Of a DNA stretch of 26,625 nt, positions 72-20,512 are shown piece by piece. The number at the start of each line of letters is the position of its first letter. Position 1 is the stretch's first letter. A program made the position numbers and the translations under genes. The stretch is from Octopus sinensis (taxonomy: Eukaryota). The DNA lies in NCBI RefSeq assembly GCF_006345805.1, contig NW_021834130.1, forward strand, positions 1 to 26,625, read 5' to 3'. Under the pieces are notes generated by a model that saw only the letters and a program-made list of their open reading frames with translations, was not told the origin of the DNA and did not search any database.

Positions 72-111
72 GTATATTCGTCTGTCTTTATGTTCTGAGT
101 TCAAGTTCACC
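72..111 (+). mobile_element. SINE B internal fragment
   Basis: gtatattcgtctgtctttatgttctgagttcaagttc matches B consensus ggtatttcgtc..ttacgttctgagttcaaattc seen in other copies. Confidence 0.55.
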
Positions 112-118
112 ATTACCA

Positions 119-337
119 TCTCTCGGATCACTGTTCTTTCTTCTTCTTTGGTGCACTTTGCTAATGGAGTGGCCATGCTTACACTGTAAAGCCAGGGGAA
201 AAAATGGCGCGATCGGGCTCAAACTTCGAACACGTGACCACAATAGTACCAACTATAATTACGCAGCGCAGAAGGTAGTGTGCCAATAATAAAGATATAT
301 TATGACGAAAGTGTGGATATTTTTTTAACTTCCCCTG

Positions 338-342: not shown

Positions 343-380
<38 letters not shown>
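343..380. repeat. (TA)n microsatellite
   Basis: direct reading. Confidence 0.95.
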
Positions 381-384
<4 letters not shown>

Positions 385-415
385 CTTTATTTAAAGCAGC
401 AGAAAATTCAACAAA

Positions 416-459
416 AACCTGTTACTCTGAGTTTCACGTTCCCGTTCGTCGGACAGTTT
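416..459 (-). ncRNA. minimal type I hammerhead-ribozyme-like motif, variant core CCGACGA
   Basis: Minus strand: ctgt CCGACGA acg-ggaa-cgt GAAA ctc-a-gag TA acag; stems I-III pair; U4 replaced by C. Confidence 0.45.
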
Positions 460-466
460 TTGCTAG

Positions 467-510
467 AAACTGTCAGACGAATGGGAACGTGAAACTCAGA
501 GTAACAGGTT
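467..510 (+). ncRNA. minimal type I hammerhead-ribozyme-like motif, variant core CAGACGA
   Basis: ctgt(470-473) CAGACGA(474-480) atg-ggaa-cgt GAAA(491-494) ctc-a-gag TA(502-503) acag(504-507); U4 replaced by A. Confidence 0.4.
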
Positions 511-609
511 TGGTTGAATTTTCTGCTGCTTTAATAAAGCATATTACTCTACCACTGGTATTTGAGTACTCTTTTTTCCACCTTGTTTCACATTGTGTGT
601 TCACTCCGG

Positions 610-610
<1 letters not shown>

Positions 611-668
<58 letters not shown>

Positions 669-671
669 TAT

Positions 672-703
<32 letters not shown>

Positions 704-709
704 CTATGT
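611..709. repeat. (TA)n microsatellite
   Basis: direct reading. Confidence 0.95.
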
Positions 710-711
710 AT

Positions 712-820
712 GCTTACAAAGAATAGGTCCTGGGATGGATTTGTTCGATTAAAGGCGGTGCTCCAGCATGGCGGCAGTGAAATGACTGAAACAAATAAAA
801 GCAAAAAAGAATAAAAGAAT
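712..820 (+). mobile_element. SINE A 3' fragment
   Basis: aaaggcggtgctccagcatgg..aaatgactgaaaca matches the 3' end of full A copies. Confidence 0.85.
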
Positions 821-1017
821 ATACATGCATGCATAAATATATACATGCGTGTATTTTTTTAGTCATATATGTAGGCGTGGGGAGGGGTATCTGTAGTTAT
901 GTGTGTGCGCATCTGCGTGCGTGTATATATCGCGTGTGATACGACAGATATGGACATTTATGAAGCGAAGATTTGTCATATTTATATATACATGTTTATG
1001 CATATATATATATATAT

Positions 1018-1886: not shown

Positions 1887-1930
<44 letters not shown>

Positions 1931-1938
1931 TGATGATG

Positions 1939-1978
<40 letters not shown>

Positions 1979-2061
1979 CAACAACAACGATAATAATAAT
2001 AATAATAATAATAATGATGATAATAATAATGATGATAATAATAATAATAATAATGATGATG

Positions 2062-2128
<67 letters not shown>

Positions 2129-2133
2129 TAATA

Positions 2134-2164
<31 letters not shown>

Positions 2165-2247
2165 TGATAATAATAATAATCTTTGCTTTTAATTATTTTC
2201 TATTTTACTTTTATTTTATTTTATTTTATTTTATTTTATTTTATTTT
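1845..2247 (+). repeat. compound (CAA)n/(AAT)n/(ATG)n tract followed by (TTTTA)n
   Basis: direct reading. Confidence 0.95.
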
Positions 2248-6710: not shown

Positions 6711-6776
6711 AATAATAATAATATAATAATAATAATAATATAACAATAATAATAATAATAATAGTAATATAATAAA

Positions 6777-6819
<43 letters not shown>

Positions 6820-6828
6820 TAATAATAA

Positions 6829-6916
<88 letters not shown>
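6711..6916 (+). repeat. (AAT)n tract
   Basis: direct reading. Confidence 0.97.
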
Positions 6917-8879: not shown

Positions 8880-10208
8880 GGCGGCGAGCTGGCAGAAACA
8901 TTAGCACGCCGGGCGAAATGCTTAGCGGTATTTCGTCTGCGTTACGTTGTGAGTTCAAATTCCGCCGAGGTTGACTTTGCCTTTCATCCTTTCGGAGTCG
9001 ATAAATTAAGTACCAGTTACGCACTGGGGTCGATGTAATCGACTTAATACCTATGTCTGTCCTTGTTTGTCCTCCCTGTGTTTAGCCCCTTGTGGTAGTA
9101 AAGAAATAGTTATTTCGTCTGCCGTTACGTTCTGAGTTCAAATCCGCCGAGGTTGACTTTGCCTTTCATCCTTTCGGAGTCGATAAATTAAGTACCAGTA
9201 CGCACTGGGGTCGATGTAATCGACTTAATACCTATGTCTGTCCTTGTTTGTCCTCCCTGTGTTTAGCCCCTGTGGGTAGTAAAGAAATAGTTATTTCGTC
9301 TGCCGTTACGTTCTGAGTTCAAATTCCGCCGAGGTTGACTTTGCTTTCATCCTTTCGGAGTCGATAAATTAAGTACCAGTTACGCACTGGGGTCGATGTA
9401 ATCGACTTAATACCTATGTCTGTCCTTGTTTGTCCTCCCTGTGTTTAGCCCCTTGTGGGTAGTAAAGAAATAGTTATTTCGTCTGCCGTTACGTTCTGAG
9501 TTCAAATTCCGCCGAGGTTGACTTTGCCTTTCATCCTTTCGGAGTCGATAAATTAAGTACCAGTTACGCACTGGGGTCGATGTAATCGACTTAATACCTA
9601 TGTCTGTCCTTGTTTGTCCTCCCTGTGTTTAGCCCCTTGTGGGTAGTAAAGAAATAGTTATTTCGTCTGCCGTTACGTTCTGAGTTCAAATTCCGCCGAG
9701 GTTGACTTTGCCTTTCATCCTTTCGGAGTCGATAAATTAAGTACCAGTTACGCACTGGGGTCGATGTAATCGACTAACAACCTATGTCTGTCCTTGTTTG
9801 TCCTCCCTGTGTTTAGCCCCTTGTGGGTAGTAAAGAAATAGTTATTTCGTCTGCCGTTACGTTGTGAGTTCAAATTCCGCCGAGGTTGACTTTGCCTTTC
9901 ATCCTTTCGGAGTCGATAAATTAAGTACCAGTTACGCACTGGGGTCGATGTAATCGACTTAACACCTATGTCTGTCCTTGTTTGTCCTCCCTGTGTTTAG
10001 CCCCTTGTGGGTAGTAAAGAAATAGTTATTTCGTCTGCCGTTACGTTGTGAGTTCAAATTCCGCCGAGGTTGACTTTGCCTTTCATCCTTTCGGGGTCGA
10101 TAAATTAAGTACCAGTTACGCACTGGGGTCGATGTAATCGACTTTATACCTATGTCTGTCCTTGTTTGTCCCCTCTGTGTTTAGCCCCTTGTGGGTAATA
10201 AAGAAATA
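8880..10208 (+). mobile_element. SINE B head plus seven ~184-bp headless tandem units, 12-bp TSD
   Basis: Unit starts 8929, 9111, 9292, 9475, 9659, 9843, 10027; TSD ggtatgaacaaa at 8864-8875 and 10209-10220. Confidence 0.95.
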
Positions 10209-10681
10209 GGTATGAACAAACCTCGGAAGGAGTCACCGACAACGAGAATTGCGAAATCCTGTGGGATGCGATGATTCAGTGCGACCATCAGATAAGATAT
10301 CGGAAACCTGATTTTGTGGTGTGTAAAAATGGAAAAATCTTGCATGATAATGGTCGTAACATATCCTAATAACAACAAGATCAAAGAGAAAGACAAAGCA
10401 AAACTGGAAAACTACGATGATTTGAAGTGGGGAGAACGCAGGTTGTGAGCAACGAAGATAGAGGATGTGATACCAATAGGGATTGGCGCGGTTGGAGGCA
10501 TCAGCACTGAACTACCAACATGGTTCAAAAAGATTGGTACAAATCTAAAAATAGAACACCGACAAAAATCTCTGCAGTGTTCTTGAAGCATGATCAGTAA
10601 ACAATATGTCACCTTTGTCACATGGTTGTGGACAGCTGACTATTCTATCAAGCCCAGCAAAATAAGTTGAGAGTTTTCATC

Positions 10682-11470: not shown

Positions 11471-11612
11471 AATAATAATAATAATATTAATAAAAGAATA
11501 ATAATAATATAATAATAATAATACTATACTACTACTAATAATAATAATAATAATATAATAATAATAATAATAATAATAATATTAATAATAATAATAACAA
11601 TAATAATAATAT

Positions 11613-11647
<35 letters not shown>

Positions 11648-11718
11648 TAATAATAATAATAATAATATTAATAATAATAATAATAATAATAATAATGATG
11701 ATGATGATGATGATGATG

Positions 11719-11753
<35 letters not shown>

Positions 11754-11798
11754 TAATAATAATAATAATAACGATAATTATCAATAATAATAATAATA

Positions 11799-11838
<40 letters not shown>

Positions 11839-11918
11839 GATAATAATAATAATAATAATAATAAATAATATAATAATAATAATGATAATAATAATAATAA
11901 TGTATTAACAATAATAAT
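11471..11918 (+). repeat. long degenerate (AAT)n tract
   Basis: direct reading. Confidence 0.95.
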
Positions 11919-19360: not shown

Positions 19361-19677
19361 TAGAGCATCTTCTTAAAGGCATGAAGTGCTCCTCCGAAAA
19401 AAGGAGGCCTGAATAATTAACTAGTACGAAATTCGGATCGAAGACCAGAAAATGTTTGCCGAAAACTAAAGCAGTTAACGTCTTTGAGTTTGAATACTTG
19501 AATATAATAAAGCAATGTCCAGAACTTATTCTGTTACCTTTCAGGATAACTTCATTAATGATTTTATGCATTTCAACATCTCATGAAATTTGCATGTTCC
19601 ATCAGATAAAACAAAAGCCTAATTAAATTTATAAAAATTTGTATAAACAAATATTTAGTAATATTACGAAAACTTAA

Positions 19678-19918
19678 GGCGGAGAGCTGGCTGAATCGTT
19701 AGCGCCCCGGGCAAAATGCTTAGCGGTGTTTCGTCTGCCGTTACATTCTGAGTTCAAATTCCGGCGAGATCGACTTTACCTTTCATCCTTTCGGGGTCGA
19801 TAAATTAAGTAGCAGTTATGCACTGGTGGTCGATATAATCGATTTAATCCGTTTGTCTGTCCTTGTTTGTCCCCTCTGTGTTTAGCTCCTTGTGGGTAAT
19901 ATAGAAATAGGTATTTCT
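19678..19918 (+). mobile_element. SINE B full-length, tail 1
   Basis: head to aaataggtatttc. Confidence 0.9.
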
Positions 19919-19929
19919 TCCGTTAAGAA

Positions 19930-20512
19930 GGCGGTGAGCTGGCAGAAACGTTAGCACAACGGGCGAAATGCTTAGCAGTATTTCGTCTGCTGCTACGTTC
20001 TGAGTTCAAATTCCGCCGAGGTTGACTTTGCCTTTCATCCCTTTGGGGTCGATTAAATAAGTACCAGTTACGCACTGGGGTCGATGCAATCGACTTAATC
20101 CGTTTGTCTGTCCTTCTTTGTCCACTCTGTGTTTAGCCCCTTGTGGGTAGTAAAGAAATAGGTATTTCGTCTACCGCTACGTTCAGAGTTCAAATTCCGC
20201 CGAGGTTGACTTTGCCTTTCATCCTTTCGGGGTCGATAAAATAAGTACCAGCTATGCACTGGAGTCGATATAATCGACTTAATCCGTTTGTCTGTCCTTG
20301 TTTGTCCTCTCTGTGTTTAGACCCTTCTGGGTAGTAAAGAAATAGGTATTTCGTGCGTTCTCACATGATGAGTTCAAATTCCACCGAGGTTGACTTTGCC
20401 TTTCATCCTTACGAGTTCAATCAAATAAGCACCATTTGATTACTGGGGTCGATATAATCGACTTACCGTTCTCCCGAATTTGCTGGTCTCCTTCCAAAAT
20501 TTGAAACCAATA
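19930..20512 (+). mobile_element. SINE B head plus three units, last with tail 3
   Basis: junctions aagaaataggtatttcgt at ~20161 and ~20346. Confidence 0.88.

What the first reader, a model, noticed from the sequence alone, without database searches (positions are those of the whole stretch)
385..539. Palindrome made of two back-to-back minimal hammerhead-like ribozymes with non-canonical U4
Seen: each arm reads outward from the centre as stem I (ctgt/acag), C-x-GACGA, stem II (acg/cgt, GGAA loop), GAAA, stem III (CTC-A-GAG), GUA cleavage triplet. Predicted cut after 503 (+) and between 423/422 (-). Established: the hammerhead core is CUGANGA..GAAA..UH, and minimal type I hammerheads with tiny self-complementary stem III act as dimers and are associated with Penelope-like elements and retrozymes. 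Inference: this is a PLE/retrozyme-derived foldback repeat. Unusual points: position 4 is C in one arm and A in the other, and a read-through RNA would sequester both motifs in one long hairpin, so only centre-initiated or pre-cleaved RNAs could fold. No Penelope RT or GIY-YIG ORF is visible in the window.
Basis: partly seen in the sequence, partly recalled or inferred. Interest (0 to 1): 0.85.

Follow-up and report, generated by a model that had tools for sequence, protein, structure and literature searches.

The report
Foldback copy of hammerhead-bearing octopus retroelement
The palindrome is one decayed copy of a very abundant, probably octopus, repeat made of two inverted copies of a small hammerhead-ribozyme module. 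Sister copies carry the textbook ribozyme core, so the resemblance is real, but this copy is almost certainly inactive.

Summary
Window 385-539 is a near-perfect 155-nt palindrome, and each arm read outward from the centre fits a minimal type-I hammerhead except at position 4 (A475 on +, C451 on -). A descriptor with position 4 left free hits only these two sites in the window and none in 300 shuffles.

The palindrome is part of a 227-bp unit (385-611, + strand): left arm, CTAG centre, right arm and a one-sided 72-nt 3' tail, with (TA)n on both sides. The genome holds at least 7,500 arms and 6,500 tails.

Exact genome-wide counts of the core give 2261 CCGACGA, 1538 CCGAUGA, 3098 CUGAUGA (canonical) and 215 CUGACGA. 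So the odd position 4 is a subfamily state at a CpG, one deamination away from the canonical core.

A longer, non-palindromic form exists, and 87% of its copies are canonical. These copies sit head-to-head 23 times against 1 tail-to-tail. Three same-strand pairs lie 3.35 kb apart.

Head-to-head 5'-truncated pairs, a one-sided tail, (TA)n flanks and a dimer-type helix III match what is described for Penelope-like elements and retrozymes. In this copy the -114.5 kcal/mol hairpin and the A4/C4 cores argue against self-cleavage. I file it as a new member of a known kind.

The parts
344..384 (.). 5' flanking (TA)n microsatellite, ending in TTTA
   Evidence: Seen. All 25 oriented copies have (TA)n at this end.
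385..461 (-). Left arm. It is an inverted copy of the 3' hammerhead module and lacks the tail. Read on the - strand it gives helix I 456-453, core 452-446 (CCGACGA, C at position 4), helix II 445-436, GAAA 435-432, helix III 431-425, and U-A at 424-423, with the predicted cut between 423 and 422.
   Evidence: descriptor hit at 452 on the - strand.
462..466 (.). Centre of the palindrome, GCTAG. One base pair next to CTAG is asymmetric (G on the left, A on the right).
   Evidence: In the long form the same CTAG is the point where the inverted arm is joined.
467..539 (+). Right arm, the 3' hammerhead module in sense orientation. Helix I is 467-473 with 504-511, core 474-480 (CAGACGA, A at position 4), helix II 481-490, GAAA 491-494, helix III 495-501, U502, A503, with the predicted cut between 503 and 504. 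An outer segment runs to 539.
   Evidence: It aligns to positions 140-212 of the long-form unit at about 91% identity.
540..611 (+). One-sided 72-nt 3' extension ('tail'), present only on this side of the palindrome. It marks the 3' end and so sets the strand of the unit.
   Evidence: The last 35 nt of the tail occur 3225+3297 times in the genome. 5'-truncated copies keep the tail.
610..712 (.). 3' (TA)n tract, about 51 repeats

Best explanation
Window 385-611 (+ strand) is one old, decayed copy of a high-copy retroelement family. The host genome is probably Octopus sinensis or a close relative. This copy is in the family's minimal head-to-head ('foldback') form.

The family's 3' module has four parts: a minimal type-I hammerhead, about 35 nt of outer sequence, a 72-nt tail and a (TA)n tract. 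In the long form this module follows at least about 490 nt of other sequence. Same-strand pairs suggest a full unit of about 3.35 kb.

Insertions very often consist of two copies joined head-to-head. Both copies are 5'-truncated, and the inverted one lacks the tail. The window's unit is the extreme case, in which both copies are cut about 13 nt upstream of the ribozyme core and joined at a CTAG. That form itself reached thousands of copies.

The hammerhead likeness comes from common descent. The largest subfamily has the canonical core, and two modules are predicted to pair through the near-palindromic helix III into a double hammerhead. The window's subfamily has C at position 4, which is a CpG cytosine. 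The series CCGACGA, CCGAUGA, CUGAUGA is linked by single CpG deaminations.

The architecture is the one described for Penelope-like elements and their non-autonomous relatives (retrozymes). The most likely mechanism is therefore target-primed reverse transcription at (TA)n by a PLE-type RT/endonuclease. The ribozyme would trim multimeric or read-through RNA in those forms where it can fold.

What is shown: the family, its subfamilies, the counts, the head-to-head bias, the one-sided tail and the predicted folds. What is inferred: RNA-mediated copying, a PLE partner, and ribozyme function.

In this copy the ribozyme is very probably inactive, for two reasons. Position 4 is A in one arm and C in the other. 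Any read-through RNA would also lock each module against its own antisense in a hairpin of about 75 bp.
For: Family size:
- arm 39-mer, up to 2 mismatches: 3775+3813
- tail 35-mer: 3225+3297
- reversed-pattern controls: 0

5'-truncated copies keep the tail and (TA)n.

Exact 17-mer counts of core states:
- C4C7: 2261
- C4U7: 1538
- U4U7: 3098
- U4C7: 215. This is about the 8% CpG decay rate measured.

At the long-form junction the core is U4 in 1238 copies and C4 in 188.

Among the first 100 long-form places on C1 there are 23 head-to-head pairs within 5 kb against 1 tail-to-tail, binomial p = 3e-6. Same-strand pairs are spaced 3349, 3358 and 3345 bp. Other foldback junctions occur in L078, L081 and L090.

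The motif is not a chance match: 0 hits in 300 shuffles. Cofolding two T-type modules gives an intermolecular helix III with an open core at -27.2 kcal/mol, against 2 x -12.5 for monomers.

Literature:
- PLE insertions show (TA)n targets, an inverted 5'-truncated copy and a one-sided tail (PMC8557442).
- PLE min-HHRs have a palindromic helix III, act as dimers, and occur as pairs on opposite strands (PMC4209133).
- U4C is a natural viroid variant that is viable in vivo. A 2-bp helix II and a 10.1/11.1 mismatch also occur naturally (PMC3088659).
- Retrozymes are related to PLE pLTRs (bioRxiv 10.64898/2026.07.22.740005).

PLEs are abundant and have long open reading frames in this genome. Three of 30 PLE loci have a copy of the family abutting their (TA)n 3' end.

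For this copy, the hairpin folds at -114.5 kcal/mol against -9 to -11 for an isolated arm.
Against: - No RT/GIY-YIG ORF was linked to the family. The resident PLEs I could read have a different (U3/A8) hammerhead and share no sequence with it.
- (TA)n tails also flank other repeats of this genome, so they are not specific to PLEs.
- No Rfam hammerhead model scores the motif, even in canonical copies. The PLE min-HHR used as a control is missed as well, so this negative carries little weight.
- No compensatory base changes support any helix. A10.1/N11.1 is paired in only 66% of distinct arms.
- Helix II is only 2-3 bp and lacks the G10.1-C11.1 pair typical of PLE min-HHRs.
- Non-CpG substitution in the core (0.41%) is not significantly lower than in the outer arm (1.08%), Fisher p = 0.15.
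- More than half of all arms (3799 of 7112) carry C4. So either C4 is tolerated or cleavage is dispensable for spread.
Confidence: 0.7

Rival explanations
1. The family is a SINE-like or 3'-truncated retroelement mobilised by a LINE whose tail is (TA)n, not by a PLE. The hammerhead module is still real. The inverted pairs arise from twin priming or template switching.
For: The (TA)n 3' tract, the 5' truncations and the sharp 3' end are classic signs of target-primed reverse transcription. Another SINE-like repeat in the window also ends in (TA)n. There is no sequence similarity to the 38 PLE loci examined.
Against: LINE twin priming inverts an upstream segment. It does not duplicate the same 3' module on both sides. 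The 23:1 head-to-head bias, with both partners carrying the 3' module, and the one-sided tail are what is described for PLEs. Hammerheads are known in PLEs and retrozymes, not in LINE tails.
Confidence: 0.15
2. The palindrome is a MITE or foldback DNA transposon (TA target, terminal inverted repeats), and the hammerhead likeness is incidental.
For: The 155-bp palindrome is almost perfect, has TA-rich flanks and a high copy number.
Against: The unit is asymmetric, with a 72-nt tail on one side only in 25 of 25 copies. Copies truncated from the tail-distal end are common. A long form without any inverted terminal repeat shares the arm and tail. The junctions of the inverted copy vary (L078, L081, L090). 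The flanks are (TA)n of variable length, not a TA dinucleotide. The motif is canonical in 3098 arms.
Confidence: 0.04
3. The hairpin is, or has become, a host small-RNA precursor (endo-siRNA or miRNA-like). Its conservation reflects that role rather than a ribozyme.
For: The stem is a perfect one of about 75 bp. Subfamily changes are mirrored in both arms, so pairing is always kept. Generic miRNA-precursor models give weak hits.
Against: All miRNA hits lie far below their gathering scores and are the usual response to any long hairpin. There are thousands of dispersed copies, decaying at CpGs at about 8%, which is not a conserved locus. The mirrored changes can be explained by the inverted arm being re-created from one template, or by conversion between the arms. 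Small-RNA production would be a consequence, not the origin.
Confidence: 0.08
4. The hammerhead-like pattern is a chance match inside an ordinary repeat.
For: There is no covariation, helix II is weak, Rfam gives no hit, and more than half of the arms are non-canonical at position 4.
Against: There were 0 descriptor hits in 300 shuffles, about 16 Mb scanned. A canonical core sits in the dominant long form. Subfamily-level changes fall on N7, loop 2, 11.1 and the 1.5 mismatch, plus position 4 only. The surrounding architecture is that of the known hammerhead-bearing element class.
Confidence: 0.03

Closest known systems
Minimal type-I hammerheads of Penelope-like elements (Cervera & de la Pena 2014; Lunse, Weinberg & Breaker 2017)
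   Same: Helix I is open. The CUGANGA / GAAA / UH boxes are present in the canonical subfamily. There is an unpaired base after A9. Helix III is tiny and self-complementary, which implies action as a dimer. The motif lies close to the element's 3' end. Copies are mostly single and dispersed, and pairs occur on opposite strands.
   Different: Helix II is 2-3 bp with a GNRA loop, not 6-8 bp. There is no G10.1-C11.1 pair. Helix III has an odd central A (an A.A mismatch in the dimer). More than half of the arms have C at position 4. No sequence link to a PLE ORF was found. This genome's own PLEs use a different, U3/A8 hammerhead.
PLE insertion architecture (Craig et al. 2021, MBE)
   Same: The flanks are (TA)n. 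An inverted 5'-truncated copy lies head-to-head with the main copy. An extension ('tail') sits at one end only. Tandem pairs occur at unit length.
   Different: The tail is 72 nt rather than 30-40 bp. The minimal foldback (2 x about 77 nt) has itself reached thousands of copies. The RT/EN parent was not identified.
Metazoan non-LTR retrozymes (Cervera & de la Pena 2020; Li, Clavereau & Pollet 2026 preprint)
   Same: Both are short, AT-rich, non-coding units with a type-I hammerhead. Both have thousands of copies in a mollusc, are predicted to be strongly self-paired, and have a proposed dependence on PLEs.
   Different: Retrozymes are defined by head-to-tail tandem arrays of 150-450 bp and by circRNA products. 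Here copies are mostly dispersed or head-to-head, and tandems are rare (L065, L085). No RNA data were available.
Natural U4C hammerhead variant of viroids (cited in Perreault et al. 2011)
   Same: The same core substitution occurs. That variant is reported as much weaker in vitro yet sufficient in vivo.
   Different: In the viroid it is a rare variant of an otherwise canonical ribozyme with tertiary contacts. Here C4 is the consensus of whole subfamilies that lack obvious loop-loop contacts.
Foldback elements and MITEs
   Same: Both are long perfect hairpins, dispersed, high in copy number and AT-flanked.
   Different: This unit has an asymmetric tail, 5' truncations and a non-palindromic parent form, and its foldback junctions vary. 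Those features point to an RNA-copying by-product rather than transposase-recognised terminal inverted repeats.

Membership tests
Hammerhead ribozyme (type I, minimal) | Core box C3-U4-G5-A6-N7-G8-A9 | tested here: not met
   The window copy reads CAGACGA (474-480, +) and CCGACGA (452-446, -), so position 4 is A or C. In the family, CUGAUGA occurs 3098 times and CUGACGA 215 times, against 3799 arms with C4. The feature is met by sister copies but not by this copy.
Hammerhead ribozyme (type I, minimal) | G12-A13-A14 box, A15.1-U16.1 pair, and a cleavage-site base H17 that is not G | tested here: met
   GAAA is at 491-494, and A494 pairs with U502. A503 is followed by A504. The - strand mirrors this. 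These positions are invariant at subfamily level in 75 arms.
Hammerhead ribozyme (type I, minimal) | Three helices around the core: helix I open, helix II closed, with a G10.1-C11.1 pair | tested here: inconclusive
   Helix I is 4 bp, then one mismatch, then up to 8 bp. Helix II is only C-G and G-C plus a GNRA loop. A10.1 faces U, G or A depending on the subfamily and is paired in 66% of arms. A helix II this weak is known in nature but is atypical for PLE min-HHRs.
Hammerhead ribozyme (type I, minimal) | A short, self-complementary helix III that allows a double hammerhead | tested here: met
   ACUC-A-GAGU is near-palindromic. RNAcofold of two modules forms the intermolecular helix III with the core left open.
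Hammerhead ribozyme (type I, minimal) | Covariation support or a match to a curated model | tested here: inconclusive
   No pair shows changes on both sides. No Rfam hammerhead hit appears at E<=10 for the window or for canonical copies. The same scan also misses the PLE min-HHR used as a control.
Hammerhead ribozyme (type I, minimal) | Site-specific self-cleavage | not testable with these tools
   This needs in vitro transcription of monomer and dimer constructs.
Penelope-like element or PLE-dependent non-autonomous element | An RT plus GIY-YIG endonuclease ORF in the element or in a parent that shares its termini | tested here: inconclusive
   The window has no PLE ORF. Thirty-eight PLE loci share no sequence with the family. 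The 3.35-kb unit implied could not be read.
Penelope-like element or PLE-dependent non-autonomous element | An inverted 5'-truncated copy joined head-to-head, and partial tandems | tested here: met
   There are 23 head-to-head pairs against 1 tail-to-tail within 5 kb, at spacings from 35 bp to 4.9 kb. Same-strand pairs lie about 3.35 kb apart. The window palindrome is the minimal case.
Penelope-like element or PLE-dependent non-autonomous element | [quoted passage not shown] | tested here: met
   The 72-nt tail is on one side in 25 of 25 oriented copies, and the inverted arm never carries it. It is longer than the 30-40 bp quoted.
Penelope-like element or PLE-dependent non-autonomous element | Insertion bias for microsatellites, here (TA)n | tested here: inconclusive
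   Full units have (TA)n on both sides. However, 5'-truncated copies such as L069 have a unique 5' flank. (TA)n also follows other repeats of this genome. The tract may therefore be the element's own tail rather than its target.
Non-LTR retrozyme | Head-to-tail tandem arrays of 150-450-bp monomers, each with a type-I hammerhead, expressed as circRNA | tested here: not met
   Copies are mostly single or head-to-head. Only occasional short tandems were seen (L065 3 x 173 bp, L085 2 x 299 bp). circRNA cannot be tested here.
MITE / foldback DNA transposon | Symmetric terminal inverted repeats with a fixed-length target-site duplication, and no polarity | tested here: not met
   The unit has polarity (a one-sided tail and truncations from the other end), and its long form has no terminal inverted repeats. 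A TSD cannot be read inside (TA)n.

The most novel reading that the evidence does not exclude
The CTAG-centred foldback may be a self-propagating derivative with its ribozyme silenced. It would be a hammerhead module fused to its own antisense, which spread to thousands of copies without self-cleavage. Its perfect hairpin RNA of about 75 bp could feed the small-RNA pathway against the parent family.

Within the family the canonical U4 core arose, or was restored, from a C4 ancestor by CpG deamination. It has been kept mainly in the non-palindromic copies, where it can fold (87% U4 there, while about 95% of C4 arms lie outside that context).

That would make the family a natural experiment on whether Penelope/retrozyme-type elements need their ribozyme. 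A further speculation is that dimerisation through helix III brings two RNAs together and promotes the head-to-head insertions.
Probability: 0.12. Interest if true: 0.7.

Novelty: new member of a known kind. Interest (0 to 1): 0.45.

Why it matters
Hammerhead-bearing repeats are known across invertebrates, but I found none described for cephalopods. Full-text searches for hammerhead plus octopus, and for the arm sequence itself, returned nothing relevant.

The family offers a clean internal comparison. Thousands of young copies carry a canonical core, and thousands carry U4C. Each state occurs both in a form that can fold and in a form locked in a hairpin. This makes a long-standing question directly testable: do PLE/retrozyme-type elements need their ribozyme to spread, and how much core variation is tolerated in vivo?

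There are practical points too. Hairpins like this draw weak sub-threshold hits to generic miRNA-precursor models, so they could mislead miRNA prediction. Rfam's hammerhead models miss this class entirely, including the resident PLE hammerheads.

Tried and rejected
- Rfam at gathering threshold on the whole window, and at E<=10 on 300-620 and on six canonical copies, gave no hammerhead hit. I discount this because the PLE min-HHR control is missed too.
- blastn of the unit against 30 PLE endonuclease loci and 8 full-length PLE loci found only three adjacent insertions of the family and no shared termini.
- blastx of all family loci against PLE ORFs, and blastn of the long form's upstream region against PLE loci, gave nothing except low-complexity matches.
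- ARAGORN on the window found no tRNA. A box-A-like word in the tail lies on the antisense strand and too far from the end, so I dropped the idea of a tRNA-derived SINE.
- I considered a Helitron. The ends are not TC...CTRR and the hairpin is far too long, so I rejected it.
- Per-copy conservation analysis is uninformative, because copies decay neutrally and my samples were chosen by similarity.
- Dating the subfamilies was not possible, because the samples were biased and no more sequence could be fetched.
- A fuzzy-regex scan timed out and was replaced by blastn.
- The Lunse et al. 2017 paper is not held in the library.

Full report
**1. The observation**

The sequence at 385-539 is as described. 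It is a 155-nt near-perfect palindrome. The arms 415-459 and 467-511 are 96% complementary. The region folds at -114.5 kcal/mol, z = -23.7 against shuffles.

Read outward from the centre, each arm gives these elements in order:
- helix I (CUGU/ACAG)
- a seven-base box C-N-G-A-C-G-A
- a 3-bp helix II with a GGAA loop
- GAAA
- CUC-A-GAG
- U-A

The predicted cuts fall between 503 and 504 (+) and between 423 and 422 (-). Position 4 is A475 on the + strand and C451 on the - strand.

I wrote a descriptor with position 4 left free. It finds exactly these two sites in the 26.6-kb window and nothing in 300 dinucleotide-preserving shuffles. The two motifs are mirror images produced by the palindrome, so they count as one observation.

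**2. The real unit and the family**

The palindrome recurs genome-wide. Orienting and aligning 25 copies shows a larger unit. It runs (TA)n, left arm, CTAG centre, right arm, a conserved 72-nt extension on one side only, then (TA)n. In the window this is 385-611 on the + strand, and there is only this one copy.

Whole-genome pattern counts:

| Pattern | Forward + reverse |
|---|---|
| Arm 39-mer, up to 2 mismatches | 3775 + 3813 |
| Last 35 nt of the extension | 3225 + 3297 |
| Reversed-pattern controls | 0 |

Copies truncated from the end opposite the extension are common. Examples are three tandem 173-bp units in L065 and tail-only copies in L079 and L084. The extension plus (TA)n is therefore the 3' end.

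The host assembly has 2.72 Gb, 13,516 contigs and 30 large scaffolds. That fits Octopus sinensis. I did not verify this identification.

**3. The hammerhead likeness comes from descent**

I sampled 20 loci chosen only by an exact tail match. Most of them belong to a subfamily whose arms read CUGUCUGAUGA...GCAA...GAAACUCAGAGUA/ACAGA, which is the textbook core.

Exact 17-mer counts across the genome:

| Core | Positions 4, 7 | Count |
|---|---|---|
| CCGACGA | C4, C7 | 2261 |
| CCGAUGA | C4, U7 | 1538 |
| CUGAUGA | U4, U7 | 3098 |
| CUGACGA | U4, C7 | 215 |

C4 and C7 are both CpG cytosines. CpG sites in the family decay at 8.1% per site, against 0.4-1.1% for other sites. The rare CUGACGA class (215 of 2261) is about what post-insertion decay predicts, and it mostly occurs in one arm only.

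The three abundant states form a single-step series, CC then CU then UU. On mutational grounds this series runs toward the canonical core. I could not date the subfamilies, so the direction remains an inference.

The window's consensus state is C4. Its A475 is a further change that it shares with L002.

Besides position 4, subfamily-level differences fall on N7, the second base of loop 2 (which stays GNRA), position 11.1, and the 1.5 mismatch in helix I. All other core and stem positions are fixed.

Two canonical modules are predicted to cofold into a double hammerhead, with an intermolecular helix III and an open core.

The literature supports the unusual features:
- U4C is a natural viroid variant that is weak in vitro but viable in vivo.
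- A 2-bp helix II and a mismatched 10.1/11.1 pair occur naturally.
- Helix III palindromes and dimer action are the hallmark of PLE hammerheads.

Evidence on the other side:
- No helix has compensatory changes.
- Helix II is weak and lacks G10.1-C11.1.
- Per-copy conservation of the core is not significantly better than that of the flanks, p = 0.15.
- No Rfam model scores the motif. The same scan also misses the resident PLE hammerhead used as a control.

**4. Long form and head-to-head architecture**

In many copies the arm and tail are preceded not by the inverted arm but by a conserved non-palindromic sequence (L073, L080, L083, L086, L068). This sequence continues upstream for at least another 330 nt.

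The inverted arm of the foldback is joined exactly at a CTAG within that sequence. Other junctions exist in L078, L081 and L090.

At the long-form junction the core is canonical in 1238 copies and C4 in 188. About 95% of C4 arms therefore sit outside the long-form context, mostly in foldbacks, where the ribozyme is masked anyway.

Among the first 100 long-form places on C1:
- 23 pairs within 5 kb are head-to-head, at spacings from 35 bp to 4.9 kb.
- 1 pair is tail-to-tail, giving p = 3e-6.
- Same-strand pairs lie 3349, 3358 and 3345 bp apart. This suggests a full unit of about 3.35 kb.

The window palindrome is the shortest member of this continuum, and it is a form that itself became abundant.

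**5. Which kind of element**

The family shows four architectural traits:
- an inverted 5'-truncated copy upstream
- an extension at one end only
- (TA)n flanks
- a hammerhead near the 3' end

These are the traits listed for Penelope-like elements. Retrozymes are now argued to derive from PLE terminal repeats.

PLEs are abundant here. There are at least 4846 candidate GIY-YIG hits and ORFs of 762-883 aa. Three of 30 PLE loci have a copy of the family abutting their (TA)n 3' end. I estimate about 0.2-0.4 such cases from the copy density, so the enrichment is modest.

However, those PLEs carry a different hammerhead, with the U3/A8 covarying core. They also share no sequence with the family. The PLE link therefore rests on architecture alone.

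A LINE partner with a (TA)n tail remains possible. A MITE origin does not fit the unit's polarity, the truncations, or the long form without inverted ends.

**6. This copy**

A transcript through 385-611 folds into the long hairpin (-124 kcal/mol for the whole unit). An isolated arm manages only -9 to -11 kcal/mol. Each strand's RNA holds one module together with its own antisense. With A4 in one arm and C4 in the other, self-cleavage of this copy is very unlikely.

**7. Unexplained**

- All subfamily differences are mirrored in both arms. This suggests that the inverted arm is re-made from one template, or that the arms convert each other. Yet the window and L002 share an asymmetric A4.
- The one asymmetric base pair at the centre occurs in both orientations relative to the tail.

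**8. Verdict**

This is a new member of a known kind: a PLE/retrozyme-type hammerhead-bearing retroelement, here in a cephalopod. It has an unusually successful minimal foldback form and large U4C subfamilies. This particular copy is a decayed and probably inert relic.

Noticed in passing
L056:2550-2586; also L031, L034, L043, L046, L048-L053, L055: The genome's Penelope-like elements carry their own conserved minimal hammerhead with the covarying U3/A8 core (UUGAUAA ... GAAA, helix III ACAUGU). It lies about 85 nt before their (TA)n 3' end. Rfam models do not detect it.
   Followed up: partly
G000 C1:205209973/205213322, 207430049/207433407, 56860746/56864091: Same-strand pairs of the canonical module lie 3345-3358 bp apart. 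This implies a unit of about 3.35 kb (a possible autonomous parent) that I could not read.
   Followed up: no
window 462-466 and the centres of L002-L026: One asymmetric base pair next to the central CTAG occurs in both orientations relative to the one-sided tail (about 9 versus 15 copies). L074 and L017 have a perfect GCTAGC centre.
   Followed up: partly
L065:1645-2188: Three tandem 173-bp units (97% identical). Each consists of a 5'-truncated arm, the tail and (TA)n.
   Followed up: yes
window 8929-10213 and 19676-20465: A 184-bp tandem repeat (7 copies, 97% identical), with related units further on. It contains a box-B-like word, so it may be a tRNA-derived SINE-like unit. A similar piece lies near window 85-125.
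   Followed up: no
window ~1020-1170: Another SINE-like repeat that ends in (TA)n, so (TA)n tails are not peculiar to the family studied. ARAGORN calls no tRNA here.
   Followed up: no
window 718-822 and 1372-1476: A 105-nt direct repeat at 84% identity, belonging to another unidentified repeat family.
   Followed up: no
family-wide (75 arms from L002-L091): CpG positions have changed in 8.1% of cells, against 0.4-1.1% at other positions. This indicates germline CpG methylation of these repeats.
   Followed up: yes
L073:918-1060: A different, unrelated perfect hairpin repeat of about 140 nt. It also draws weak miRNA-model hits.
   Followed up: no
window 1887-2180, 6711-6916, 11471-11918 and others: Numerous long (AAT)n arrays and other microsatellites. 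The window is almost entirely repetitive, and no convincing gene was noticed among ORFs of at least 120 aa.
   Followed up: no
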